From positions 372,001 through 436,000 of IMG/VR virus record IMGVR_UViG_3300033145_003233: a stretch of DNA of 64,000 nt; one strand, 5' to 3'. The notes beneath the pieces are model-generated. The model saw only the letters and a program-made list of their open reading frames with translations. It was not told the origin of the DNA and made no database searches. The position numbers were made by a program, and so were the translations under genes. Positions 30,609 through 59,181 of the stretch are shown in pieces (the first letter of the stretch is position 1; each line of letters begins with the position of its first letter).

Positions 30609-31319
30609 TTACCAGTTATTGGCGAAATCATCCTTGCCGGAACTTTTAGAATCAACAGGAGCAGAAGCGGGAGTAGAAGCGGGAGCAGAAGCAGCAGTAG
30701 CGGCTACTGGCTCACTTGGTGTGCTGCTTTCCTTCTTTTGCCATTCTCCAAACAACTTTTCTTCTATTTGCTCTGGAGCATCCGTCTTGTATAATTTCTT
30801 CAGCTTGTCCTTATCCCCATCCAGAGATTCTTTAATAGCTTCTCTTTCCTCTTCGGTTAAAGGAGTATTTGCACAAAACACAACGTCATATTTAGTATTT
30901 AACCCCTTACCACTTACCGTAACGCTCCAATCGCTACCATCCTTACCACTTCCAGGATTTTTGCCCGTTATCTCTAAACTTTTTCCGATTGGGCGAAAAA
31001 CTGTCTGAGGAGCCTCTAAAATCTTAACTTTGCCGTCTGAACGATCAATAACATACGCAGCAAACCTCAAAGAAGGCTTTTTCAACTCAGAATGACGGTC
31101 CCTGACTGGACAAGTATCAGGAGAACCACAAATAGCAGTTCTCAATCTACCATCATGCTTATGAAAATACTTAAAAAATTTCACTGGAGAAAAGATTGGT
31201 CGGATACGATAGCTTTTTCCGCTTTCAAATCTGAGGTAATCATTTTTCTCCCCATCCCCACCACTACTAGTTGTTGGGATAGAATCCCATTGAACAAATT
31301 CCGTCATTTTTTCTGTCAT
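30609..31319 (-). CDS. Single-stranded DNA-binding protein (phage gp32-like)
   Basis: Y.IR, Zn-like C...CP.C/H, VKILE, G.GLNTKY.V, flexible tail ending DDFANNW; adjacent to recA. Confidence 0.7.
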   Translation of the reverse strand: MTEKMTEFVQWDSIPTTSSGGDGEKNDYLRFESGKSYRIRPIFSPVKFFKYFHKHDGRLRTAICGSPDTCPVRDRHSELKKPSLRFAAYVIDRSDGKVKILEAPQTVFRPIGKSLEITGKNPGSGKDGSDWSVTVSGKGLNTKYDVVFCANTPLTEEEREAIKESLDGDKDKLKKLYKTDAPEQIEEKLFGEWQKKESSTPSEPVAATAASAPASTPASAPVDSKSSGKDDFANNW

Positions 31320-32528: not shown

Positions 32529-32807
32529 TTAATCAAACATATCAATTTCATCTTTAGGCGTTTTACTGGTTTTTTTTACCTTAACGCTACCTATACATCT
32601 ATCGACCTTAAGGGTTGTAACCACCTCATTATATGTCTTTGTAAAATCTTCTATCAGAATATCTGTAATTTTATTAGTTTTTTCTTCCCTTTCTCCTGGA
32701 TTCTCCCATTCAATTTCTTCCTCTGCCTCCACTGTAATCGTAACTTGCTCAAATTGTTTCGTTTGTATTCCTCTTACTATACTCTTTTTAATTTTAGACT
32801 TACCCAT
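32529..32807 (-). CDS. Hypothetical protein
   Basis: ORF with SD. Confidence 0.65.
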   Translation of the reverse strand: MGKSKIKKSIVRGIQTKQFEQVTITVEAEEEIEWENPGEREEKTNKITDILIEDFTKTYNEVVTTLKVDRCIGSVKVKKTSKTPKDEIDMFD

Positions 32808-33015: not shown

Positions 33016-34998
33016 TCAAAACAAATCCTCAAACATATCCACTGATTCTATTTTCTTTTTCGTTGTTTTTTTACGATCTCTCCTGATCATCAAAAAATCT
33101 TCCATCATTTCTTCCTTACGATCTATTTGCTTTTTCCCGAAAAATCCCGCTTCGATTAAAGCCTCCACCGCTCTAGTATCTACAATAGAAGAATCAGTTT
33201 TATTCACTATATCCCTCATGCCGCTATAAGGCTGATTGTCCTCTATATGCTTAGCCGTATTTGCTCTCATTCCCTTACATAACAAACTAGGTCTTATCTC
33301 TGTCTTTTTTATCCCGTTTTTTTCATCTTTTCTTTTTTCTATAACATATTGAACCTTCGATTTATTTATGTCTCTAGGAAGGAATTTGATATTCATTTTC
33401 CTTTTAAACTCTTTCTCAAAAGCATCTATTTTATCATATCTGTTTCCCTGAGAACCATTAATAGTCACATCTAACAAAGAGCAAATAAATTCATCAGGAT
33501 AATTAGCTTTCAAAAATGCCGTAGTATAAGAGTTGTATCCATAACAGGCACTATGAGCTAAATTAAATCCATACGAAGCAAATGGAGTAATAAATTTAGT
33601 CCAGTATTGTTGAGCTACATCCCTTGGAACCTTATTATCTATACATCCATCAACAAACTGTTTTTCAAACTTAGCCATAAGATATTCTTTTTTCTTTCCA
33701 ATGGCCTTAATCATTACATAACCATCTGTAATAGTAAAACCAGCTAAGTTGCTACATATCTGCATCACTTGTTCTTGAAAACACAAAACCCCATAAGTCT
33801 TTTTTAGATAAGACTTTACAAAAGGCTCAATTGACTTGTGGAAATAAGTTACTTCTTTTTCTCCGCTCTTCCTATCACAATATTCTGGAATACTATCCAT
33901 TGGACCAGGACGATAAAGAGCCAAACCAGCAACAATATCTTCAAAACTATCAACACCTATACTTCTCATGGTATGTTGCATACCATAATTCTCACATTGA
34001 AAAACTCCACCCAAATTACCATCTCTATATAATTTAAAAGCTCCCGCGTCATCAATAGGGAGATTCTCCAAATCAATTTCTATCCCCCAATAATCTTTTA
34101 TTTTTTCTACTGTTTTCTTAATTACCGTCAAAGTGGCAATAGCTAGAACATCAAATTTAATCAACCCCAAAACTTCTAAATCTTCATTAGGAAATTGGGT
34201 TGCCAGCACCCCCTTCTTAGCATTTCTTAATGGAGCTATTTCATTTAAAGGAATATTAGAAACAACCACGCCAGCCGCATGAAAACCGAAATTAGCGAAT
34301 GTGCCTTCGATCACCTCCATATACTCTTTTATACCTGTATCTTCGTACTTATCTATATAATGTCTAAAATCTGGACAATGCTCATAAGCATCATCGAAGG
34401 TTTTAATAAGATGACTATTCCCCCCTTCATCTTTAACTTTAAGCAAGCCATATTTCGGAAATGGTGATAAAATTTCAGAAGCCTTAGCAGCATTTTCGCT
34501 TATATAGGAATCTTTTCCTTTATGAAAAGCATCTGCGATATCTAGTGCTTTAACCACCCTAGTAACACATGATTTAAATTTTAATAAACCATGAGTACCT
34601 ATATTCCCAACATTCTCTCTGCCGTACTTATTTATAATATAACTATATACACCATCCCTATTCTCATAATCAAAATCAGTATCTATATCAGGCAAGCCAG
34701 CTCTAGCAAAAGCACGTCTGGTGGGGAGGAAATCTCCCGATGGCTTAGTTTTAGTCATACCAAGAAAATAGGCCGTCCAGCTATTAATATCATTCCTATT
34801 ACCAGCTTTTTTATCATGATTTTTCCATATATTGTAAAAAACTTCCAAATTATTCCTAGATTCCAGCCCCTCTGTAGTTTCCATTAATTCCATTTCTCGC
34901 TTTGCTTTTGAAAGAATTTTGGATAAATCAGAATGATCAGCGTATTTTCTCTCCACCGCCTCTATGATTTCTAACTTAATTACCCTCAATTCTGCCAT
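33016..34998 (-). CDS. dnaE: DNA polymerase III alpha subunit, C-terminal (catalytic) part
   Basis: PDIDTDF, HAAGVV, KFDVL, GVFQ.E, YRPGPM, FQEQVM, YGFN..HS. Confidence 0.93.
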   Translation of the reverse strand: MAELRVIKLEIIEAVERKYADHSDLSKILSKAKREMELMETTEGLESRNNLEVFYNIWKNHDKKAGNRNDINSWTAYFLGMTKTKPSGDFLPTRRAFARAGLPDIDTDFDYENRDGVYSYIINKYGRENVGNIGTHGLLKFKSCVTRVVKALDIADAFHKGKDSYISENAAKASEILSPFPKYGLLKVKDEGGNSHLIKTFDDAYEHCPDFRHYIDKYEDTGIKEYMEVIEGTFANFGFHAAGVVVSNIPLNEIAPLRNAKKGVLATQFPNEDLEVLGLIKFDVLAIATLTVIKKTVEKIKDYWGIEIDLENLPIDDAGAFKLYRDGNLGGVFQCENYGMQHTMRSIGVDSFEDIVAGLALYRPGPMDSIPEYCDRKSGEKEVTYFHKSIEPFVKSYLKKTYGVLCFQEQVMQICSNLAGFTITDGYVMIKAIGKKKEYLMAKFEKQFVDGCIDNKVPRDVAQQYWTKFITPFASYGFNLAHSACYGYNSYTTAFLKANYPDEFICSLLDVTINGSQGNRYDKIDAFEKEFKRKMNIKFLPRDINKSKVQYVIEKRKDEKNGIKKTEIRPSLLCKGMRANTAKHIEDNQPYSGMRDIVNKTDSSIVDTRAVEALIEAGFFGKKQIDRKEEMMEDFLMIRRDRKKTTKKKIESVDMFEDLF

Positions 34999-35022
34999 AT
35001 AAATCTCCCCTACGTCAGCTAT

Positions 35023-35051
35023 AGAATATCCGATTCCCTTTCACTTTTCAA
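35023..35051 (-). promoter_or_regulatory. sigma70-like promoter upstream of dnaE C-part
   Basis: TTGAAA AGTGAAAGGGAATCGGA TATTCT. Confidence 0.6.
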
Positions 35052-35264
35052 CTATAAATCTAAAATTTCGAATCTCAACCCAATATCTGAAACGATATCT
35101 CCATATCCCCTAATAGAAATAGGAGGTTGAAATCTTTTTTCTTTCAACTCGGATACGCTAATAGTGGGAGTAACAAACAATGGAGTATAAGGGACATATA
35201 TATATGCCTCCCCTAGAATATCTCCTCCTTTAAAACCAAGCCGGATTTGACTAGCTGTAGCCAA
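35052..35264 (-). CDS. Small protein resembling the C-terminal segment of T4 gp23-type major capsid protein, with RFEILDL tag
   Basis: LGFKG....AYIYVPYTPL..TP....FQP...R.YG versus gp23 VGYKG...AG.YY.PY..L.....FQP....RYG. Confidence 0.55.
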   Translation of the reverse strand: MATASQIRLGFKGGDILGEAYIYVPYTPLFVTPTISVSELKEKRFQPPISIRGYGDIVSDIGLRFEILDL

Positions 35265-35282
35265 TGTTTTACTCCCCCTCTT

Positions 35283-35513
35283 TTATAAATCCAAAATTTC
35301 AAACCTACTTTCTATAGGTTCCCATTCCCACATTATTGATGACCCATAAGGGACAATTATAGAACCAAGAGTTGTTCTTAACCTCATATATTCCAGCATC
35401 ACATCATGGGGAATCTCTCCCCTCCCATAATATTTTATCATCTCTTGAGTTCTCTCGTCCTCAAAAAATTCAACTTTCCCATTAATAGATATCTTAATAT
35501 CTGTCAACGCCAC
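35283..35513 (-). CDS. Hypothetical protein with RFEILDL tag
   Basis: Ends PIESRFEILDL-stop. Confidence 0.6.
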   Translation of the reverse strand: MALTDIKISINGKVEFFEDERTQEMIKYYGRGEIPHDVMLEYMRLRTTLGSIIVPYGSSIMWEWEPIESRFEILDL

Positions 35514-35826
35514 CTAAGTCATCCTCTAATTCATGCTCATGCGAATCATCATTTAAGTCAGAAAAATCCATAGCTCGAACAATATTCCCGATATGGTTAG
35601 CCAGTACAGGGTTTTCTGCCTGCATTTCCTCTATCGTATATCTATCTTTCATCCACCGATTCTCCATTTTTTTATCATCGAAAAAAACATACATACCCTT
35701 CCTAAATTCTGATTTATCGCCAAATTTAGTGTACACTAAGATTCCCCCATCCTTAATTTCTTCACGACTCACTATCTCTGTCACTCCTCTTGACCCATCA
35801 TCAAATTCATATCCTATATACAACAT
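35494..35826 (-). CDS. Hypothetical protein sharing C-terminal ELEDDLGGVDRY with DnaE N-part
   Basis: AGGAG SD; identical last 12 aa. Confidence 0.7.
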   Translation of the reverse strand: MLYIGYEFDDGSRGVTEIVSREEIKDGGILVYTKFGDKSEFRKGMYVFFDDKKMENRWMKDRYTIEEMQAENPVLANHIGNIVRAMDFSDLNDDSHEHELEDDLGGVDRY

Positions 35827-35858
35827 TCTATTCTCCTAACTTTTATTAATATTATCTT

Positions 35859-36896
35859 TCAATTTTTTATATGCTTCTTTAATTCCCAAATTGCTCTCTT
35901 ATATCTCGGCATAAATGTCTCATATTTACAATCCCCAGGTTTAACAGTCCTTAAAGTTATTCCAAGTTCTTTACATTTTTTACGCTTTCTCTTATCTCTA
36001 TCTTTTTGTTGCTTTAGCTTACTTTCTCCATGAATAGGTTTATAATGAAAGTTCCCACTAACCTCTACTGCATAATTTATATCAGGGAAATAAAAATCTA
36101 GCTCTAAAGGAGCAACAACTGTTCTATTATTTCTATCATATTTTACATTCAGTTTTTTAACCAATTTTTCAAACTGAGTCTCTACAAATGATTCTTTAAA
36201 TTTATACTTAGCGAAACATCTAATAGAACAAAAATGATGCTGATTCCTTTTAACATAAATAGGGGATTTAAAAACATTTTTATCGCATCCGTCACATTTT
36301 ACCCGAATTTTATTATTCTGAAATTCATTACAACACTTTTTTGAGCAAAATATATTATCCTTCCCCCTTAAAATGCTAGGAGATCTATATAAAATCTTAT
36401 CACAATTTTTACAATATACTCTCATTCTTTTATTATTATTGTCACTCCTGCATTTGATCGAGCAACAGTGAGTGAGGCTTCTTTTTCGTTCTGCTGAATT
36501 TTTATAAAAGTTTTTCCCACATACCTCACAGGCTACACTATTAATCCTTTGATAATAACTGGACTTACACTGCATATTACAAAAATATATATCTGTTTTA
36601 TTATCATCCCTCTCTCTCTTACATCTGTAAATAGATTTATGACAATTAGAACATCTTACTTCATTTTTTTCTATTTTATGCTTCGACAAACATATTTTAT
36701 TACAATAATGATGCTTAGACTTTTCTAAATATTTTTTTCCTCTCCTATTTTTTTTACCACAATAATCACAGTCTATTATTTTCGATCCCTTAATATCATT
36801 AGCACAATTCCTGGAACAACAATTTGTTTTACTTTTTAATATATGTGACAATTTTTTATAGAATTCTTTACCACAATAATCACAGTCTATAAGCAT
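35859..36896 (-). CDS. Homing endonuclease with Zn-finger (CxxC..FCS..C) repeats and Vsr/DUF559-like nuclease
   Basis: Six C..C.K.....(F/Y)C...C repeats; ELDFYFP..YAVE..G.FH. Confidence 0.75.
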   Translation of the reverse strand: MLIDCDYCGKEFYKKLSHILKSKTNCCSRNCANDIKGSKIIDCDYCGKKNRRGKKYLEKSKHHYCNKICLSKHKIEKNEVRCSNCHKSIYRCKRERDDNKTDIYFCNMQCKSSYYQRINSVACEVCGKNFYKNSAERKRSLTHCCSIKCRSDNNNKRMRVYCKNCDKILYRSPSILRGKDNIFCSKKCCNEFQNNKIRVKCDGCDKNVFKSPIYVKRNQHHFCSIRCFAKYKFKESFVETQFEKLVKKLNVKYDRNNRTVVAPLELDFYFPDINYAVEVSGNFHYKPIHGESKLKQQKDRDKRKRKKCKELGITLRTVKPGDCKYETFMPRYKRAIWELKKHIKN

Positions 36897-36978
36897 ATTT
36901 CTTATCTCCTATTGAAAAATAAATGTTCTCAACTATTATTAAATACAATTTAATAGGAGATAATCCCTCTTTTATTTT

Positions 36979-38391
36979 TTAATAACGGTCTACTCCCCCA
37001 AGATCATCTTCTAATTCTCTATCTACATCTCCTTTATCGGCGGCTTGTTGAATAAGGTTTTCCTCAAAGCCAAAATCTGACTCTTTTATAAACTTGAGCG
37101 AATCAAACCCAAGGAATCTCTCCCACAACAACCCATGTTCTATAGGGTCAATCCCATATGTAATCCCCAAACACCTCAACAAGACACTCGCATAACCCGA
37201 TCCACGCCCACAACCAACTAATATACCTCGTTCTTTGGCATCCTGGATATAATCTCGAACAATCAAAAAATAAGTCGAAAAATCATAATTATTACTTTCC
37301 TGTGCTACCAAAACATCTTTTAATTCCAGTTCTAATCTTTCAACATGTTTTTTACTATTATTCCATCCTACAGTCTTCATGCCTTCCCATGCAAGACGAC
37401 ACAAATATTCATAAGCATTTTTATATTCAGATGGAATTTCAAATTTGGGCAACCTCATTCCCCCAAATAAATTTTCTTCTATGTTCTTGGTATCTATTCG
37501 TTCAGCCAGCATAACAGAATTAGATAAACAATTAGAAGTGTTATTAAATATCTTCGCCATTTCTTCTGCACTTTTAAGATAGAACTCCATATGACTAAAA
37601 CTCAACCTGTCTGGATCTTTAACGCAACGTTGTTGTGACATGCACATTAAAACTTCTTGAGATTGGCCTTCTTTTCCAATTATATAGTGCCCATCATTCG
37701 TGCAAACTACAGGAATATTTAATTCAGAGGATAGTTTAAAAATTAAGGGGATAATCGCTTTCTCTTCCCTGATACCGTGGTACATTACTTCTAAAAAGAA
37801 ATTCTTATTAAATATCTCATTAAAAGTCCCGCATATCTTCTTTGCTCTATCATAGTTGCCATATACCAAATTGATATTAATAACACTTGATAAACAAGCA
37901 GAGCTACACATCACTCCCTCAGAATGCTTAGCCAGCAAATCTATATCAACTCTTGGATCAAAATAAAAACCATCAGTATATGACTTCTGAGACATACGAC
38001 ATATATTCTGATAACCCTTAAAATTCATAGCATATAAGTTGATATGCCTGTTTCCCCTTCTCCCATCAGGTTGGTTCTTTTTAGTTTTTTTAGTATCTTT
38101 TTTTTCATCGTATTGCCCTATATCCATTTTTCTAGAAAGATACATCTCACACCCAAGTATGGGTTTGATAGGAGCATAGGGAATACTATTGCCTTTTTTA
38201 TCTTTTGTGATACGACAATGTTGAAGGAATTTAATCCATCCCATAACAGACCCATGATCTGTTAGGGCAATAGCAGGAAACCCCATTTGCCTAGCTTTCA
38301 AAACAAGCTTATCAATTTTCGCGAGACCATCAAATTGGCTATACTCAGAATGTACGTGCCAATGAACAAAATCTTTATTTTCAAATTTCAT
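36979..38391 (-). CDS. dnaE: DNA polymerase III alpha subunit, N-terminal (PHP) part
   Basis: HVHSEYS..DG, TDHG, TNDGHY, YFLIV.D, GRGSG, LLWERFL. Confidence 0.93.
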   Translation of the reverse strand: MKFENKDFVHWHVHSEYSQFDGLAKIDKLVLKARQMGFPAIALTDHGSVMGWIKFLQHCRITKDKKGNSIPYAPIKPILGCEMYLSRKMDIGQYDEKKDTKKTKKNQPDGRRGNRHINLYAMNFKGYQNICRMSQKSYTDGFYFDPRVDIDLLAKHSEGVMCSSACLSSVININLVYGNYDRAKKICGTFNEIFNKNFFLEVMYHGIREEKAIIPLIFKLSSELNIPVVCTNDGHYIIGKEGQSQEVLMCMSQQRCVKDPDRLSFSHMEFYLKSAEEMAKIFNNTSNCLSNSVMLAERIDTKNIEENLFGGMRLPKFEIPSEYKNAYEYLCRLAWEGMKTVGWNNSKKHVERLELELKDVLVAQESNNYDFSTYFLIVRDYIQDAKERGILVGCGRGSGYASVLLRCLGITYGIDPIEHGLLWERFLGFDSLKFIKESDFGFEENLIQQAADKGDVDRELEDDLGGVDRY

Positions 38392-38394
38392 CTT

Positions 38395-38562
38395 TTACCA
38401 ATTCCAATTATCTAAACATTTAACGCAGAACGACTCAAATTCTTCCCTTGTAAGATGAGAATCAGGAGTGACTAATCTATGAATTGCCTTTCCTTCATCT
38501 AAATCCTTATAAGAAATGAATCTGCCGCAAAACTCACATCTTATTCGTTCTACTTTTTTCAT
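38395..38562 (-). CDS. Small Zn-finger protein
   Basis: CEFCGRFI...CVKC; ATGA overlap start. Confidence 0.6.
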   Translation of the reverse strand: MKKVERIRCEFCGRFISYKDLDEGKAIHRLVTPDSHLTREEFESFCVKCLDNWNW

Positions 38563-38918
38563 AAATCTAAAATATCCCACCTCGTTATATCATCATCTAT
38601 ATCTAATATTTTATGCTTTTTTGTGGTAGCATTAATCTCTACAACATGAGCAAAGGGGACTCTCTTCATTGTGGTCTTGACCCCCTTTTTGAAAGCTAAT
38701 AAATCAAGAGTTTGATCTTCGTATATTTTTAAAACTCTTACTTTCTCAAAATCTAAATTAAAAAAATCTTCCTGATGAGGAAGCCACTTCTTCATAGTCA
38801 TAGAAAATTCTATTCTATGATCATAAAGATTTTTAAAAACAATCTTGATAGTATCTATGTCTGACAACTCTTTATTGAAAATAGTTGTAACTATATGTTC
38901 TCGTCTAATAAATCTCAT
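38559..38918 (-). CDS. Hypothetical protein with RWDILDL tag
   Basis: Ends ITRWDILDL-stop. Confidence 0.7.
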   Translation of the reverse strand: MRFIRREHIVTTIFNKELSDIDTIKIVFKNLYDHRIEFSMTMKKWLPHQEDFFNLDFEKVRVLKIYEDQTLDLLAFKKGVKTTMKRVPFAHVVEINATTKKHKILDIDDDITRWDILDL

Positions 38919-38920
38919 CT

Positions 38921-39181
38921 TTAGCAATGCTTCGTAGGATCGTATCTCTCCCTATGACCATCTTTAAATCTAATGTACTTCGGATTTTGTTTTTTAACAT
39001 AATTAGAATCAGCTTCAAAACACTCTCTATCACCTCTCCATCCCCTAATATTCTTGGGAACTTTTATTCTTATACATTTTGTCCCATCAGGAGCATAAAA
39101 AGGTTTATTAATCTTTTTAAATGGTCTTATTTCCTCAAAAATTTCTCCCGTCTCTGGATGTTCAAATTCGTAAATTGGAAT
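38921..39181 (-). CDS. FmdB-like small protein with ATT start, not in ORF track
   Basis: GGGGAG SD then ATT CCA ATT TAC GAA TTT = (M)PIYEFEHPETGEIFEE; 86 codons open, fills an operon gap. Confidence 0.7.
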   Translation of the reverse strand: MPIYEFEHPETGEIFEEIRPFKKINKPFYAPDGTKCIRIKVPKNIRGWRGDRECFEADSNYVKKQNPKYIRFKDGHRERYDPTKHC

Positions 39182-39193
39182 TATTTTTCTCCC

Positions 39194-39724
39194 CTATAAA
39201 TCTAAAATATCAAACCTAGAAATAGATTCCCCTTTAGATTTCTTTTTCCTTTTCTTTTTTACTTTTTTCTTTGATTTTTTCGCTGCCTCAGTCGGAGAAT
39301 CTGGAAAAACCGTGTTCCACTCTATCCCACTAACATGACCCTCATTATATGGTTCACTCAATGTCGAAGAAGATATAGTGAAGCCCGAAGAAAAATGGAC
39401 AGGATTATTAAAATGAATTTGAGAGTTAGCAGTCATATTGATATAATTACCAGAGCTATCCTCGACATATGGCTCAATATGGATAGGATTCTCAGACATT
39501 TGCAATTCACCCGTTTGCACAGTAAGATTAATAGGCAACTGCTTTTCTATTACAAAATTTTTATTTTCAGAAAGATTAAATTGTAAAAATTCTAAAAAAG
39601 TTATACCGGAAACACAACTTTGCATATCATCATGCAAAGTTAAATATTCTGCACGAATATCTAAATAATCTTGTTCTTCATTAAAAACAACTGAGAGATT
39701 TTCTATATTATGCGAATAACTCAT
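39194..39724 (-). CDS. Hypothetical protein with RFDILDL tag
   Basis: Ends ISRFDILDL-stop. Confidence 0.65.
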   Translation of the reverse strand: MSYSHNIENLSVVFNEEQDYLDIRAEYLTLHDDMQSCVSGITFLEFLQFNLSENKNFVIEKQLPINLTVQTGELQMSENPIHIEPYVEDSSGNYINMTANSQIHFNNPVHFSSGFTISSSTLSEPYNEGHVSGIEWNTVFPDSPTEAAKKSKKKVKKKRKKKSKGESISRFDILDL

Positions 39725-39725
39725 T

Positions 39726-39974
39726 TTACAAATCCAATATTTCTAACCTAGATAGACCTTCTTTTCTATCTGGGGAACTTTTAATTTTCACCATAAAATC
39801 TTCGTATTGACTCAAAGATTGCTCCATCTCATATATCATATCAAACAACACGGTATTAGGTTGATCTAATATTTGATCTACCTCCTCAATAGTTAATCCA
39901 TGAAATCTGGCGAAAGATGAGACACCTAATAGGAAGAATATCTCACTAAAACTGCGACCGTGCTGATCACCCAT
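39726..39974 (-). CDS. Hypothetical protein with RLEILDL tag
   Basis: Ends LSRLEILDL-stop. Confidence 0.65.
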   Translation of the reverse strand: MGDQHGRSFSEIFFLLGVSSFARFHGLTIEEVDQILDQPNTVLFDMIYEMEQSLSQYEDFMVKIKSSPDRKEGLSRLEILDL

Positions 39975-40765
39975 TATAAATCTAAGAGGTCAAATCTATC
40001 ACAGTTGTCCTCTTCTCCCCTATAATCCGTCCCTTCCTCTAACTTATCGGAATATATCCCCATAATTTTCCAACCCTTCTCCATAGCTAACTCCTTGGCC
40101 CTCGTAAAAATCCTTCTCCCATATTTTCTTTTAAATTCTTTGTATTTAAATTTGCTATATGCATTATAATGCCTAGTCTCTATTTTTTCCATTGCCAGAA
40201 TATTTCTTGTCGCTTCATCATAAGATATATTCATCAAATGCGGCAAAAAATTATACTTAATTATATGTTCATCTGAATGACCATTACTCCTTAAATATCC
40301 TATTGACCACCCATATGCAAATTCCTCCCTAATCTCACTACTAACAGAACGATGCCCCAAAGCAACATAACAATAATGACACAATTCATGAACAATAACT
40401 TCATCTTTACTTACCTTTGCCTCTATATGATAAGTTCTATTGACAGGAGTTGAGGAACGATGAGCACCACACAACACCACTATCTTCGTAACAGGGTCAT
40501 AGAAACCCTCCACTCCATGATATCCCATTCTATCCATGTCCCTGGCAGCAACTTTGAAAACCACTACATCTTTTACACTGGCCCCTGGAAATAAAGCATC
40601 TACATAATCATAAGCCTTTTGAAAATCTGTGTAATATATTTTCTTGAGAGCTATTTTTCTAATCTTTTCGATATTTTTTTGAGTTAGCTCAAACTGCTTC
40701 TTCGATTCTTGTCTGAAACCATGATCATACAAATAAGAATGAGATAAACTAGTAGCTCTAAACAT
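39974..40765 (-). CDS. Putative zinc metallopeptidase with RFDLLDL tag
   Basis: GFY...IVL, HELCH (HExxH), downstream EEFA. Confidence 0.65.
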   Translation of the reverse strand: MFRATSLSHSYLYDHGFRQESKKQFELTQKNIEKIRKIALKKIYYTDFQKAYDYVDALFPGASVKDVVVFKVAARDMDRMGYHGVEGFYDPVTKIVVLCGAHRSSTPVNRTYHIEAKVSKDEVIVHELCHYCYVALGHRSVSSEIREEFAYGWSIGYLRSNGHSDEHIIKYNFLPHLMNISYDEATRNILAMEKIETRHYNAYSKFKYKEFKRKYGRRIFTRAKELAMEKGWKIMGIYSDKLEEGTDYRGEEDNCDRFDLLDL

Positions 40766-42897: not shown

Positions 42898-44436
42898 TTA
42901 AAATACATCATCTATATCTTGTGATGATTTAGAATCGCTATAACTATAAATGTCATCAGCTTCTTCAAAAACACTACTCTTCTTAATAATATCCTTGTCA
43001 GCTTTCGCCTCATCCACTTGTTCTCCCATAATATCATCTTCTCCATCATTCCCATCATAAAGAGGAGGGCTTTTAATAAGACCAAACTGAGGATAAATTT
43101 CCAATATAGCTCGTGCCTTACCATCTGCAAAAGTAGTTGGACCATTACGAGACTTAACAGTAAATAAATCTAATATTTGATTTGGTTGTGCAGTATTTTT
43201 TAATTGAGCATATATGTTATCAGCATCAGCGGCATATTCATGTGACCCCCTAATATCTTCAGAATTAATAGATGCTTTATCTCTATTTGCTCCTGCTTTT
43301 CTAAGCCTTTTAAGAGCCTCTCTTCCCAACTGGGCAGCAGACACTACTGCAAAATCCAAATCTTTACCCATTTGTCTCATTGACTTTAACATATCTCCAA
43401 TTTCCAGGTCATTACGATCATATCTTTGCCGATCTGCTTCCAGATTAGCCACATAATCAATAACAACTAACTTGGGAGCAATAAGTTCTATATTCCTTTC
43501 TATCTGTCTACCTATCTTACTTACAGTAGTATAGCCACGTTCTTGCATCATAAAGAACTTAGAAGGCAAAGAATCCCAGTTCCTATTCATTTCTTCTATC
43601 TTCTCAAAATCTTCATCTGACAAATCTTTAACATTTTTGGTAATTACTTCAGATGGCAATCGTGCTTCTCTAGCACATGCTCTTCTCCACATTTGGTCTC
43701 GATGCATTTCCAGAGGAACAAATAAAACATCATAACCAGACCTCCATACATTCAAACCGATATTGAGTATCATCGTGCTTTTATAAGCCCCCACATCCGC
43801 CGTGAATAAAGTTAATGTCCCCTTCTCAAGACCAGTAACCATTGTATAATCTATTTCTCTAATGCCGGTTAAGATTGGAGGTTCTTCTATTATTTTGCCG
43901 CTTCTTACATCTGCTATATATTGAGTTCTTTCTTTAGATAATACCCTGATATCATCAAAATAAGCTTTAGCAGAAGGCCCAGTAGTTCTGTCTAATAAAG
44001 TATTACATTTATCAGACAAATCCTGCACAGCACCGATAATGCCTTTAGATTTATAATTTATTTTAAAAGCATCCATAGCGTCAGCTACAGAGTCCTGCAC
44101 ATGACCTTCTAAAACTTTATTGATATATAGTGGCAAATCATCCATCTCCGCATAAGCAGAGAAACAGGCATTAAAAGATAATTCTCGAGAGATTCTTTCT
44201 TTAGGGATTAAATAACTTTTTATTTTTTCTCGAAATGATTTAGGGGTCAAAAGAACCCCATTAATATCATAAGTTTGTAATATCAATGTGACAAGAGGAC
44301 TATAAATATCGCTAAAATATTCTACAGACAAACCACTATCAATAAAAAAATCGATGGCAGATCGGTGATGTAATAAAAGATATATTAATTCTCTTTCTGT
44401 CTGTAAGCTATCTTTATTTTTTGTGGCATTAGCCAT
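42898..44436 (-). CDS. dnaB: Replicative DnaB-like helicase
   Basis: GAYKST Walker A, LEM, VIDY, AQLGR, IRGS..ADAD, KSRNG. Confidence 0.9.
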   Translation of the reverse strand: MANATKNKDSLQTERELIYLLLHHRSAIDFFIDSGLSVEYFSDIYSPLVTLILQTYDINGVLLTPKSFREKIKSYLIPKERISRELSFNACFSAYAEMDDLPLYINKVLEGHVQDSVADAMDAFKINYKSKGIIGAVQDLSDKCNTLLDRTTGPSAKAYFDDIRVLSKERTQYIADVRSGKIIEEPPILTGIREIDYTMVTGLEKGTLTLFTADVGAYKSTMILNIGLNVWRSGYDVLFVPLEMHRDQMWRRACAREARLPSEVITKNVKDLSDEDFEKIEEMNRNWDSLPSKFFMMQERGYTTVSKIGRQIERNIELIAPKLVVIDYVANLEADRQRYDRNDLEIGDMLKSMRQMGKDLDFAVVSAAQLGREALKRLRKAGANRDKASINSEDIRGSHEYAADADNIYAQLKNTAQPNQILDLFTVKSRNGPTTFADGKARAILEIYPQFGLIKSPPLYDGNDGEDDIMGEQVDEAKADKDIIKKSSVFEEADDIYSYSDSKSSQDIDDVF

Positions 44437-52126: not shown

Positions 52127-52900
52127 CTAACAATCTGATTTAACCCATGATTTTTGTCTTACTTCTATCCCAAAAAATTGTGGCCAATATTTTCTACACA
52201 TAGTAAAATGCTCTCCTACAGTTTTATCCTGATGTATTGTAGTAACACTATTATCATGCTTTCTATAATAAACTAATGGCTGAAGGATATTATCAAATTT
52301 ATATCCATACGAAATAGCCTTGCCCCATAAATAGAAATCTGGCACTAATCTCCACTCTGCCGAATACCCCCCTATTTTTTCAAAAGCTCGTCTCCTAAAC
52401 ATACTAGCAGGATCTATTATAGGATTTTTTACTTTTAAAAATTCTGCTCTTATCTCTTTGTGTGTCGGTGGAGGATAGTCCATAATCTCTAGCTCTTCAC
52501 CATTCTCATCTATTTTAATGGCCCAGGAACTAACACAAAATACATCTTGATGATCTTCAAGAAAAGCAACTTCCTTTTCTAATCTCTCTGGAAAACTAAT
52601 ATCATCTGCATCATGTATAGCTAAATACTTTCCCTGAGCATATCTAATAGCTTCATTCCTGCCTGCTCCACAACCTATATTTTTCTTTTCTCCCAATTCC
52701 TTAATCGCGATAAAACGATTCAAAATCCCCCCTTTACTATATGCTTTTAATATTTCAAAAGTATTGTCAGTAGAGGCATCATCATAAACAATGAGTTCAA
52801 AATCTTTAAATGTTTGTGAAAAAATAGAATCTAATGCTTCCTCTATAAACTCCTCACAATTATAAACAGTCATAATTATACTAACTTTTGGCCTTTTCAT
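52127..52900 (-). CDS. Glycosyltransferase family 2
   Basis: VSIIM.VYN, DDASTD, RN, DADD. Confidence 0.92.
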   Translation of the reverse strand: MKRPKVSIIMTVYNCEEFIEEALDSIFSQTFKDFELIVYDDASTDNTFEILKAYSKGGILNRFIAIKELGEKKNIGCGAGRNEAIRYAQGKYLAIHDADDISFPERLEKEVAFLEDHQDVFCVSSWAIKIDENGEELEIMDYPPPTHKEIRAEFLKVKNPIIDPASMFRRRAFEKIGGYSAEWRLVPDFYLWGKAISYGYKFDNILQPLVYYRKHDNSVTTIHQDKTVGEHFTMCRKYWPQFFGIEVRQKSWVKSDC

Positions 52901-53121
52901 AAATCTAATATCTCCCATCTGCTATTAATCGGATCATGAAACCCTTCTAAGCAATCTTCTCTCCATTCAAAAACACCAACCCTTTTTAAAATATATTTAT
53001 CTTTATATATCTTCCTTACCACAGTGGTTCTATCATTTAATTGGTTTATACACGCTTGTGCCGCTGAATTACAAATCAAATCTGTTCTTATCCTTACCTT
53101 GTCCCCTACTTTATACTTCAC
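52897..53121 (-). CDS. Small KOW/SH3-like protein with RWEILDL tag
   Basis: MKYKVGDKVRIR; ends INSRWEILDL-stop. Confidence 0.7.
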   Translation of the reverse strand: MKYKVGDKVRIRTDLICNSAAQACINQLNDRTTVVRKIYKDKYILKRVGVFEWREDCLEGFHDPINSRWEILDL

Positions 53122-58008: not shown

Positions 58009-58036
58009 TTGAAAGTGAAAATATAAATGTTAAAAT
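58009..58036 (+). promoter_or_regulatory. sigma70-like promoter
   Basis: TTGAAA GTGAAAATATAAATGT TAAAAT. Confidence 0.55.
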
Positions 58037-58361
58037 GGCATCTATGTTTAAAATCGAAGAAGAAATTCAACTAACAAAAAATGGAGATTTTTTACAAAGT
58101 TCTAAAGAACTTAGAGAATACTACACCCCTAGAACTATAGGCTATCATAAATATTGCGATTCAAATCGATCAAAAGATTCTTTCATGTATTTACACAGAA
58201 CATCAAAACAAAAAAATACCATCTTTTGTAAAAAATGTAATTTTAGAATTGAGATACCCCTAAAAGTAAATAATTTCAAAAAAATAAAAAAATATTTTGA
58301 AAATAGATTTGATGATCCAATTGATAGAATCCAAGACAGATCAGAAATTTTAGATTTATGA
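58035..58361 (+). CDS. Hypothetical protein with RSEILDL tag
   Basis: Ends IQDRSEILDL-stop. Confidence 0.65.
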   Translation: MASMFKIEEEIQLTKNGDFLQSSKELREYYTPRTIGYHKYCDSNRSKDSFMYLHRTSKQKNTIFCKKCNFRIEIPLKVNNFKKIKKYFENRFDDPIDRIQDRSEILDL

Positions 58362-58864
58362 TGAAACTCGAAAAAGATTTTATACAATGTTGTGCAGAAT
58401 TTTTATTCAAAATAGCTGATTTTGAAGACTATGATGATAAACACTATATTAGTATGGGCCACGGGGATGGAGAACACCTTTGTTTTAAGTGTTGTGAAAA
58501 AGAAGTCGAAAAAATTAATAAAGAATTGCCCGAGAATGAAGAAAAAGCTTTTGTAGATGGAGGATGGAATGGTGCGGGTATTGACGGAAATGATGAAGGA
58601 CCTGATTCCTGTGATATATGCTATAAAAAATTAGATTATTCTTTATCTGAAAGTGGAGTTATACAAGAATGTAAATTTTTCTTAGAGGAAGACTTAGTAG
58701 AAATAACTCCGAATAATGCTGCTGAACTATATTATCTTTTCGACAATAGTGATAATTATGATTTTCAAGGTAATGACTTAAATAAATTGACAAAATTAGC
58801 CAATAAAATTTGGCGTCTTTTAGATCAAACAATTGAGAGTAGGTTTGAGATTTTAGATTTATGA
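58358..58864 (+). CDS. Hypothetical Cys-containing protein with RFEILDL tag
   Basis: Ends IESRFEILDL-stop. Confidence 0.7.
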   Translation: MMKLEKDFIQCCAEFLFKIADFEDYDDKHYISMGHGDGEHLCFKCCEKEVEKINKELPENEEKAFVDGGWNGAGIDGNDEGPDSCDICYKKLDYSLSESGVIQECKFFLEEDLVEITPNNAAELYYLFDNSDNYDFQGNDLNKLTKLANKIWRLLDQTIESRFEILDL

Positions 58865-59181
58865 GATATAAAGTAGGAGATAAAGTAAGAATAAAGACGC
58901 AAGAACAAATGAGGGAAGAAGGACATGTGGGAAGACATAGTAATAAGGTGATAGTCTGTAATTATAGATATTTTTTTGATTCGATAGAATCTGATGTCAA
59001 TAAATATTCTACAGATAGAATATTAACAATTGCAAGTGTAGAAAACGATGAGGATGGGGATTATTATTACACAATGAAAGGGATGTGTTGGAGATGGAAC
59101 GATCCTATGATTGAAGGTATAGTAAAAAATTGTGAGAAGCCCATATCTATTAAAAGCAGATTTGATATTTTAGATTTATGA
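58861..59181 (+). CDS. Small KOW/SH3-like protein with RFDILDL tag
   Basis: MRYKVGDKVRIK (paralog of 52897-53121); ends IKSRFDILDL-stop. Confidence 0.7.
   Translation: MRYKVGDKVRIKTQEQMREEGHVGRHSNKVIVCNYRYFFDSIESDVNKYSTDRILTIASVENDEDGDYYYTMKGMCWRWNDPMIEGIVKNCEKPISIKSRFDILDL

What the first reader, a model, noticed from the sequence alone, without database searches (positions are those of the whole stretch)
35052..35264. Mini-protein resembling a major-capsid-protein C-terminal fragment, carrying the RFEILDL tag
Seen: LGFKGGDILGEAYIYVPYTPLFVTPT...FQPPISIRGYG. From recall of T4 gp23-family C-termini (VGYKG...AG.YYAPY..L....FQP....RYG) this looks like an isolated capsid segment fused to the tag. 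Inference: a capsid-derived decoy (for example against capsid-sensing defence systems), an assembly modulator, or a hint that the tag is linked to the capsid.
Basis: inference. Interest (0 to 1): 0.6.

Follow-up and report, generated by a model that had tools for sequence, protein, structure and literature searches.

The report
Capsid-fragment mini-protein with docking tag
A 70-residue gene lying between the two halves of a huge phage's split DNA polymerase is a conserved small protein: it combines a short piece of a foreign, T4-type capsid protein with a seven-residue tail that about fifty other proteins of the same phage also carry, and what it binds is still unknown.

Summary
Window 35052-35264 (-) is an intact 70-codon ORF with a strong ribosome-binding site, and it ends in RFEILDL. 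Residues 2-51 resemble the conserved segment near the C-terminus of gp23-type major capsid proteins (T4 gp23 about 433-478). Support for this: Pfam Gp23 is its only hit; gp23-type capsid proteins searched against the whole 548-kb genome find only this ORF; 13 of 17 family members hit Pfam Gp23; the profile-profile P is 4e-9.

It is not an orphan. Sixteen related small proteins (67-173 aa) exist in metagenomes. In every context I could read, the gene sits in the gap between DnaE-N and DnaE-C of related huge phages.

The phage's own capsid protein belongs to a different family (290 aa, phrog_2522). The mini-protein is therefore not a copy of the resident capsid gene. The homing endonuclease beside it is a later insertion and did not bring it in.

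The tail is a peptide-level tag. It occurs on about 51 ORFs here and on 17-25 in relatives, and is absent from gp23-type huge phages.

AlphaFold gives no autonomous fold. I read the protein as an exapted capsid fragment acting as a tag-docked, peptide-like binder. The decoy and assembly-modulator ideas remain untested. A weaker second similarity, to the phage's own capsid protein, is unexplained.

The parts
35052..35264 (-). Mini-protein gene, 70 aa. It is the shortest member of a family of 67-173-aa proteins (alignment A1).
   Evidence: dN/dS 0.25-0.5 against three relatives, with dS near saturation
35272..35280 (-). Shine-Dalgarno sequence GAGGGGGAG, 7 nt before the TTG start
   Evidence: read from the sequence
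35112..35261 (-). Residues 2-51: the segment resembling the gp23-type capsid protein C-terminal region (T4 gp23 about 433-478). The core is the 28-residue motif GF.G..(7)..G..Y.PY.PL..TP.
35052..35075 (-). RFEILDL tag plus stop codon. AlphaFold puts residues 54-67 in a helix that covers the tag.
35283..35513 (-). 76-aa tagged ORF (starts MALTDI), a conserved first resident of the DnaE gap. Its start lies inside the GGVDRY codons in another reading frame.
35494..35826 (-). 110-aa ORF whose last 12 codons duplicate the tail of DnaE-N. Probably a chimera left by the endonuclease insertion.
   Evidence: 8 synonymous and 0 non-synonymous differences. Absent from the gaps of G001, G002, L041 and L042.
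35859..36896 (-). Free-standing homing endonuclease with zinc fingers and a nuclease domain. It is a lineage-specific insertion.
   Evidence: phrog_559 E 1.4e-14, phrog_9084 E 7e-8; absent from relatives' gaps
36979..38391 (-). DnaE N-terminal piece (PHP domain plus the start of the pol III alpha domain), ending in GGVDRY
33016..34998 (-). DnaE C-terminal piece (rest of the pol III alpha domain, finger and HhH domains)

Best explanation
The ORF is a genuine, conserved small gene of a clade of huge phages. It is neither a pseudogene nor a copy of the resident capsid gene. It has three parts. (1) About 45 residues, with a 28-residue core, descend from the conserved strand segment near the C-terminus of a gp23-type (T4-like, closest to the cyanophage/huge-phage subtype) major capsid protein. 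These were captured from a foreign phage, because this clade's own capsid protein is a different 290-aa family. (2) A short helical linker. (3) The clade's common C-terminal tag (N-cap residue, then R-F-E-I-L-D-L). The tag is selected as a peptide and is carried by about 50 otherwise unrelated small proteins. The protein has no autonomous fold. Inferred mechanism: it works as a peptide-like ligand. The tag helix docks it on the still unidentified hub that reads all tagged proteins. The invariant Y-A-P-Y-I-P-L strand engages a target by strand addition. Shown: gene reality, family, position, capsid-segment homology, tag as peptide, foreign capsid type, lack of autonomous fold. Inferred: docking, strand addition, and the identity of hub and target. 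The most specific candidate target is gp23-type capsid protein of co-infecting phages.
For: Intact ORF with a strong SD. 16 relatives at E 6e-7 to 1e-3 among 1.84 billion representatives. All are small, and all match at their C-terminus including the tag. The gene lies in the same position, between DnaE-N (ending GG[VI]DRY) and DnaE-C, in G002, L041 and L042, with degenerate copies in G001 and G004. dN/dS is 0.25-0.5. gp23 likeness: Pfam Gp23 is the only hit for the mini-protein. 13 of 17 members hit Pfam Gp23, best E 0.0012. 8 of 17 hit phrog_138 'major head protein'. hhalign of 16 relatives, without the window's protein, against 7 gp23-type capsid proteins gives Prob 96% and P 5e-9. The score is 62.6 against 12.2 +/- 2.1 for 150 column shuffles. 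The family HMM scores 25-30 bits on cyanophage/huge-phage-type gp23 and 12-19 bits on T4-proper types. Own capsid protein: phrog_2522, E 1e-64, unrelated in sequence to gp23. No gp23 homologue is found in the genome or its relatives. Tag: 51 ORFs here; synonymous codon variation; conserved in orthologues; 25 and 17 strict matches in G001 and G002, all on the coding strand, 0 in the reversed control and 0 in two gp23-type huge phages. AlphaFold2 with the family alignment gives pLDDT 59 and pTM 0.19; only two helices are predicted, one covering the tag.
Against: No partner was identified for either the tag or the capsid-like strand, so the mechanism is inference only. The similarity to gp23 is confined to about 28-45 residues, and each single protein is below Pfam's gathering score. 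The seven gp23 sequences in my own profiles were picked from hits to the mini-protein, which biases those profiles; this is mitigated by the Pfam and PHROG results and by leaving the mini-protein out. In G001 and G004 the gp23-like motif has decayed while the tail is kept, so the motif is dispensable in some lineages. A profile search of PDB sequences found nothing. A second, weaker similarity to the phage's own capsid protein does not fit a simple single-origin story. No expression data exist.
Confidence: 0.5

Rival explanations
1. The family derives from, or mimics, the phage's own capsid protein: the segment just before the spine helix, residues 80-117 of the 290-aa protein. It would act on the phage's own capsid as an assembly modulator, as a decoy for capsid-sensing host immunity, or as a way for the tag to load proteins into the head.
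For: The own capsid protein is the best non-tag hit of both the mini-protein (blastp E 0.14) and the family HMM (E 0.05-0.2) among 3602 ORFs. hhalign of the family against the own-capsid alignment gives P 6e-4 over 38 columns. The score is 29.9 against 11.5 +/- 2.3 for shuffles, maximum 18.6. The matching stretch (P-T-V-x-L-S-E-I-K-x-x-R-F) is invariant in the capsid family and conserved in the mini family. AlphaFold puts a helix there.
Against: The signal is much weaker than the gp23 signal: Prob 29% against 96%. No member hits phrog_2522, while 8 hit phrog_138. Column shuffles are a lenient null. The complex prediction gave no support, which is not evidence either way.
Confidence: 0.12
2. 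The gene is an accessory of the split polymerase. The family would be kept in the DnaE gap because it helps the two DnaE pieces, or the replisome, to assemble. Its capsid ancestry would then be irrelevant.
For: The gene sits between DnaE-N and DnaE-C in all six contexts read. The neighbourhood is a replication module with RecA, a gp32-like SSB, DnaB and an AAA+ protein. Replisome proteins here end in acidic or aromatic tips.
Against: The gap is a variable array of 1 to 8 tagged small ORFs like the arrays elsewhere in the genome, so the position may only reflect descent. The gp23-like motif is lost in G001 and G004, which still carry the same split DnaE. No binding was tested.
Confidence: 0.12
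3. The likeness is chance or convergence. The family would be an unrelated small tagged protein whose proline- and tyrosine-rich strand merely resembles the gp23 motif.
For: Only about 28 columns align with confidence. Single-sequence statistics are weak: Pfam E 0.066, best tblastn E 0.05. No capsid protein reached E 1e-3 in the search of 1.84 billion proteins. The PDB profile search was empty.
Against: 13 of 17 members independently rank Pfam Gp23. The profile-profile P is 5e-9 with the window's protein left out. The score lies about 24 sd above shuffles. The register is the same in all members. Flanking features (F-K-G before the motif, F-x-P and R-Y after it) survive in some members.
Confidence: 0.12
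4. The ORF is debris carried in by the neighbouring homing endonuclease: a 3' end of a capsid gene co-converted with the mobile element, with no function of its own.
For: Endonuclease genes sit directly after gp23-type capsid genes in LR756508 and in Rhizobium phage RHph_I1_18. An endonuclease lies 600 bp upstream here. Such a route may explain the original capture.
Against: Relatives have the family without any endonuclease in the gap. The endonuclease insertion in this genome can be dated after the gap ORFs by the duplicated DnaE-N tail. The family is conserved, with dN/dS below 1, and keeps its start, SD and tag.
Confidence: 0.04

Closest known systems
gp23-family major capsid proteins (Pfam PF07068; T4 gp23, PDB 5VF3/6UZC)
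   Same: Shares the conserved segment G-[FY]-[KR]-G ... Y-x-P-Y-x-P-L ... T-P (T4 gp23 about 437-458). In this window's copy it also shares the F-Q-P and R-x-Y-G features further on.
   Different: It covers only about a tenth of a capsid protein. It has no N-arm, E-loop, spine helix or insertion domain, no predicted fold, does not sit in a head module, and carries a tag. The genome's real capsid protein is of another family.
Capsid-protein homologues and small proteins that redirect another element's capsid assembly (SaPIbov5 Ccm, SaPI CpmA/B, P4 Sid; from my own knowledge)
   Same: This is the known precedent for a mobile element encoding a capsid-related or capsid-binding protein aimed at a different element's capsid. 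It is the mode of action I consider the most specific candidate.
   Different: Those are full domains with demonstrated binding. Here there is a 45-residue fragment, no demonstrated target, and a phage rather than a satellite.
Shared C-terminal short linear motifs that bring many proteins to one receptor (encapsulin cargo-loading peptides, sliding-clamp binding motifs such as Pol IV Q-L-V-L-G-L or the RB69 polymerase tail, SSB tips; from my own knowledge)
   Same: An extreme C-terminal, about 8-residue hydrophobic/acidic peptide, conserved as a peptide on many unrelated proteins.
   Different: The receptor is unknown. No clamp gene was found. Binding to the capsid protein is unsupported. The sequence matches none of the known consensus motifs.
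Genes in pieces created by free-standing homing endonucleases (phage Aeh1 nrdA split by mobE; from my own knowledge)
   Same: The context matches: DnaE is encoded as two polypeptides with mobile and small ORFs between them, and an endonuclease insertion has duplicated the target's 3' end.
   Different: The DnaE break predates the endonuclease seen here and is shared by the whole clade. The mini-protein is a resident of the gap, not part of the endonuclease cassette.
Gol peptide of T4 gp23 (a short capsid-protein stretch sensed by the Lit defence protease; from my own knowledge)
   Same: Shows that a short gp23 peptide on its own can be biologically active in a host-defence setting.
   Different: Gol lies at about gp23 residues 93-122, not in the C-terminal segment copied here. 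No defence link was tested.

Membership tests
Gp23 major capsid protein family (PF07068) | Score above Pfam's gathering threshold (24.4 bits) | tested here: not met
   13 bits, E 0.066 for the mini-protein. The best family member reaches E 0.0012, still sub-threshold as listed.
Gp23 major capsid protein family (PF07068) | Conserved C-terminal motif G[FY][KR]G ... YxPYxPL ... TP, in register | tested here: met
Gp23 major capsid protein family (PF07068) | Complete HK97-type fold (N-arm, E-loop, P and A domains) | tested here: not met
   70 aa in total; AlphaFold2 pLDDT 59, pTM 0.19, no sheet
Gp23 major capsid protein family (PF07068) | Encoded in the head module and serving as the virion's shell protein | tested here: not met
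   It lies in the replication module inside split DnaE. The shell protein is the phrog_2522-type ORF at genome 10648-11520.
Small DnaE-gap proteins with gp23-like core (alignment A1; family defined here) | Core G.IYAPYIPL..TPT followed by Y.DIYSDI..RFEILDL at the C-terminus | tested here: met
   phmmer E 6e-7 to 1e-3 to 16 cluster representatives; alignment. The family HMM built without the mini-protein scores it at 63 bits.
Small DnaE-gap proteins with gp23-like core (alignment A1; family defined here) | Position between DnaE-N (ending GG[VI]DRY) and DnaE-C | tested here: met
   (and degenerate copies). Only 5 other contexts could be read.
RFEILDL-tagged proteins of this phage clade | C-terminal [SND]-R-[FWY]-[ED]-[IL]-[LM]-D-[LI] at or within a few residues of the end | tested here: met
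   The mini-protein ends L-R-F-E-I-L-D-L; 51 ORFs in the genome carry the tag.
RFEILDL-tagged proteins of this phage clade | A common receptor for the tag | not testable with these tools
   No candidate receptor was identified. No literature was found on the motif.
Encapsulin-type cargo-loading peptide / capsid-targeting tag | Peptide binds the shell protein | tested here: inconclusive
   Complex prediction of own capsid protein plus mini-protein: no answer
Sliding-clamp binding motif | A clamp encoded by the phage or host, and a motif fitting Q-L-x-L-F / Q-L-x-L-x-L | tested here: inconclusive
   No DnaN domains were found in the genome by a search of low sensitivity. The motif only loosely resembles known ones.

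The most novel reading that the evidence does not exclude
The clade runs a tag-addressed repertoire of about 50 small proteins. Within it, this family would be a weaponised capsid fragment: a piece of a T4-type capsid protein kept by a phage with a different capsid. It would insert into, and so poison, the folding or assembly of gp23-type capsids of phages co-infecting the same cell. Alternatively, through its second likeness to the phage's own capsid protein, it would be addressed to the phage's own shell.
Probability: 0.12. Interest if true: 0.85.

Novelty: new variant of a known kind. Interest (0 to 1): 0.55.

Why it matters
This would be a clear natural case of a capsid-protein fragment being captured from another phage lineage, kept under selection, and rebuilt as a small tagged protein. 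It also opens a way into the larger puzzle around it: a seven-residue C-terminal tag on about 8% of the ORFs of a 548-kb phage and on dozens of ORFs in its relatives. Because the family has a recognisable and mutable core motif, it is a convenient bait for finding the tag's receptor. It also allows a direct test of whether huge phages use capsid fragments against competing phages or to load their own heads.

Tried and rejected
- Same-length word search: it found only the protein itself.
- PDB sequence searches: with the mini-protein, only a spurious outer-membrane protein; with the family profile, nothing.
- Literature search for the tag: no relevant paper.
- Own-genome searches with Pfam HK97 capsid, S77 prohead protease, Terminase_6C, T4 portal and DnaN domains: all empty. 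This route is insensitive for this genome. The terminase and capsid protein were only found by PHROG scans of candidate ORFs.
- ESM Atlas look-up of a 631-aa candidate: uninformative.
- Pfam on ten tagged proteins: nothing usable.
- Regex search for a Y.PY.PL motif in large ORFs of the genome: none.
- Promoter and terminator scan of the DnaE gap: no excess over shuffles.
- Sequencing-run search: none was listed, so no read mapping was done.
- Complex prediction of own capsid protein plus mini-protein: no support and no evidence against.
- AlphaFold model: confidence too low for a fold search, so none was run.
- The Gordonia phage tblastn hits lie in unannotated DNA near a genome end and look like chance.
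- The idea that the tag is homologous to the last strand of gp23-type capsid proteins (E-F-Y-G-L-V-V): the forced alignment is collinear but has no statistical support.

Full report
**What is in the sequence.**
The window is bases 372001-436000 of a 547,943-bp virus record with 33.6% G+C that reads well in code 11. On the minus strand, 35052-35264 is an open frame of 70 codons. It has a TTG start, a GAGGGGGAG ribosome-binding site 7 nt upstream, and the C-terminal heptapeptide RFEILDL.

The gene order around it, in the direction of transcription, is:
- a DnaE N-terminal piece (36979-38391: PHP domain plus the first part of the pol III alpha domain);
- a zinc-finger homing endonuclease (35859-36896);
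- a 110-aa ORF;
- a 76-aa tagged ORF;
- the mini-protein;
- a DnaE C-terminal piece (33016-34998).

**Is the capsid likeness real?**
Evidence from the mini-protein alone:
- Pfam Gp23 is its only Pfam hit (E 0.066, 13 bits).
- A translated search of 50,697 phage genomes gave 35 weak hits. Of these, 31 lie on the same part of gp23-type capsid genes from at least seven distinct phage groups, including two uncultured huge phages.
- The reverse search is cleaner. Three gp23-type capsid proteins searched against the whole genome each find this ORF as their best hit.
- An HMM of seven gp23-type capsid proteins finds only this ORF among 3602 ORFs (26 bits, E 9.5e-7). Those seven sequences were chosen from hits to the mini-protein, so I looked for independent tests.

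Independent tests using relatives found later:
- 13 of 17 family members individually hit Pfam Gp23 (best E 0.0012), and no other capsid family appears.
- 8 of 17 hit phrog_138 'major head protein', and none hits the family of the genome's own capsid protein.
- With the window's protein left out, the family profile matches the gp23 profile with probability 96% and P 5e-9 over 28 columns.
- The score of 62.6 compares with 12.2 +/- 2.1 for 150 column-shuffled versions.
- The family HMM scores 25-30 bits on cyanophage- and huge-phage-type gp23 proteins and 12-19 bits on T4-proper types.

On T4 gp23 the segment is about residues 433-478. It lies just before the A-P linker, residues 486-502, described in PMC9546572. 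From HK97-fold topology I infer that it comprises the last A-domain strands and the following P-domain strand. That assignment is inference.

**It is a family, and it has a fixed address.**
- A same-length word search found nothing.
- The exhaustive search of 1.84 billion cluster representatives found 16 relatives (E 6e-7 to 1e-3). All are 67-173 aa and all match at their very C-terminus, tag included. No full-length capsid protein was among them.
- The conserved core is G.IYAPYIPL..TPT, then a variable stretch, then Y.DIYSDI..RFEILDL.
- Every context I could read lies in the gap between a DnaE-N ending in GG[VI]DRY and a DnaE-C:
  - the 298-kb contig G002;
  - two short metagenome contigs;
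  - degenerate copies, with the gp23-like motif decayed, in the 351-kb contig G001 and the 87-kb contig G004.
- Pairwise dN/dS is 0.25-0.5, with dS near saturation.
- The gap itself is variable. It holds one small ORF in G004, four in G002 and eight in G001, nearly all tagged.

**The endonuclease did not bring the gene.**
- None of the relatives has an endonuclease in the gap.
- In this genome the last 12 codons of DnaE-N occur twice: once on DnaE-N and once at the end of the 110-aa ORF. The copies differ by 8 synonymous and no non-synonymous changes.
- The second copy still overlaps the start of the 76-aa ORF exactly as the DnaE-N tail does in relatives.
- This is the footprint of an endonuclease cassette inserted about 25 codons before the end of DnaE-N, carrying its own copy of the tail. 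The mini-protein was already there.
- Endonuclease genes do sit directly after gp23-type capsid genes in other phages. Such an element remains a reasonable vehicle for the original capture, but that is conjecture.

**The phage's own capsid protein is of another kind.**
- Pfam-based genome searches found no gp23, HK97, S77 protease or T4 portal.
- PHROG scans of candidate ORFs located the large terminase at genome 33639-35537.
- They also located a 290-aa major head protein at genome 10648-11520 (phrog_2522, E 1e-64).
- That capsid protein has 946 close homologues, some on contigs of hundreds of kilobases. It shows no significant likeness to gp23-type proteins.
- Relatives G001-G004 also lack gp23.
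- The fragment is therefore foreign in type. A decoy for sensing of the resident capsid cannot be argued from the gp23 likeness.

**An unexplained second likeness.**
- The own capsid protein is nevertheless the best non-tag hit of the mini-protein and of the family HMM within the genome (E 0.05-0.2).
- Profile comparison aligns family columns covering IYAPYIPL..TPTLN.SDLK..RF with capsid residues 80-117, just before the spine helix (P 6e-4, probability 29%).
- The score is 29.9 against 11.5 +/- 2.3 for shuffles.
- This signal is far weaker than the gp23 signal, and shuffles are a lenient null. It overlaps and extends the gp23-like stretch, and I cannot dismiss it. Chimerism, mimicry or chance all remain open.

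**The tag.**
- In the genome, 43 ORFs end in [SND]-R-[FWY]-[ED]-[IL]-[LM]-D-[LI], and 8 more carry it within a few residues of the end.
- Most are 58-110 aa and sit in tandem arrays. Many have zinc-ribbon cysteines, and Pfam recognises none of those tested.
- The tag codons vary at synonymous positions, so selection acts on the peptide. The stop often overlaps the next start.
- Orthologues in relatives keep the tag or close variants of it.
- A strict DNA pattern for the tag gives 25 matches in G001 and 17 in G002, all on the coding strand. It gives none in the reversed control and none in two gp23-type huge phages.
- AlphaFold places the tag in a short terminal helix.
- I found no literature on the motif and no receptor.

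**How it most likely works.**
With the family alignment, AlphaFold2 gives pLDDT 59 and pTM 0.19, with two short helices and no sheet. The protein probably has no fold of its own. I therefore read it as a peptide-like binder:
- the tag helix anchors it to whatever hub reads all tagged proteins;
- the invariant proline- and tyrosine-rich strand, in its native setting a strand of a capsid protein's sheet, engages a target by strand addition.

The most specific candidate target is a gp23-type capsid protein of a competing phage. The replisome (because of the gene's fixed address) and the phage's own capsid (because of the second likeness) are alternatives. None of these was shown. The single complex prediction allowed, own capsid protein with the mini-protein, returned no support and is not evidence either way.

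**Verdict.**
The ORF fails membership of the Gp23 family as a capsid protein, but it very probably descends from one. It is a new variant: an exapted, tagged capsid fragment forming its own small family in a clade of huge phages.

Noticed in passing
window 33016-38391; L004 4082-10580; L037 2016-3059: DnaE is encoded in pieces throughout this phage clade, with the break after GG[VI]DRY inside the pol III alpha domain. Relatives additionally carry inteins in the C-terminal piece. One is interrupted by a free-standing endonuclease ORF and one has LAGLIDADG motifs. This genome's copy lacks them.
   Followed up: partly
window 35494-35540 and 36979-37017: The 12-codon DnaE-N tail (ELEDDLGGVDRY) is duplicated, with 8 synonymous and 0 non-synonymous differences. 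This is the footprint of the homing-endonuclease insertion. The 110-aa ORF is probably a by-product chimera.
   Followed up: yes
whole genome (G000); window examples 38559-40765, 52897-53121, 58035-59181: About 51 ORFs carry the C-terminal tag (P)I-x-[SND]-R-F-[ED]-I-L-D-[LI]. They lie mostly in tandem arrays at genome 136-153, 407-412, 430-431 and 517-522 kb. Relatives G001 and G002 have 25 and 17 strict matches, and gp23-type huge phages have none. The receptor is unknown.
   Followed up: partly
genome 10648-11520 (L029 5648-6520, minus strand): The phage's real major capsid protein is only 290 aa (phrog_2522) and is very strongly conserved: 946 homologues, with the listed ones 78-97% identical, on contigs up to 453 kb. 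Most neighbouring ORFs have no recognisable relatives.
   Followed up: partly
genome 18958-21243 (L029 13958-16243, minus strand): A portal-like protein (weak Portal_Mu match) carries a C-terminal DUF559-type endonuclease domain. This is another sign of heavy invasion by mobile nucleases.
   Followed up: no
window 35494-35513; L041 362-381; L042 186-205: The first gap ORF (starting MALTDI or similar) begins inside the GGVDRY codons of DnaE-N in another reading frame. This overlap is conserved across relatives.
   Followed up: partly
window 33016-33045, 30609-30640, 42898-42930, 32529-32560: Replication proteins end in acidic or aromatic tips: DnaE-C ..SVDMFEDLF, gp32-like SSB ..DDFANNW, DnaB ..QDIDDVF, and a 92-aa ORF ..DEIDMFD. 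These resemble the docking tails of T7 and T4 replisome proteins.
   Followed up: no
window 39974-40765: A 263-aa tagged protein has an H-E-L-C-H metalloprotease-like motif. It has tagged orthologues in G002 (L040 530-1321) and G004 (L004 1334-2206, tag variant RFDLMDF).
   Followed up: no
genome 126525-134708: Seven tandem paralogues of about 275 aa all end in HPFINE. This is a paralogous family, not a tag.
   Followed up: no
L002 4385-6097; L005 2324-2908: Homing-endonuclease genes lie immediately downstream of gp23-type capsid genes in an uncultured huge phage and in Rhizobium phage RHph_I1_18. This is a possible route by which capsid 3' ends travel.
   Followed up: no
alignment A1 against PHROGs: 14 of 17 family members hit phrog_13936 through the Y.PY.PL stretch. 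This is a 43-position family of unknown function. It may hold similar capsid-fragment ORFs in isolated phages.
   Followed up: no
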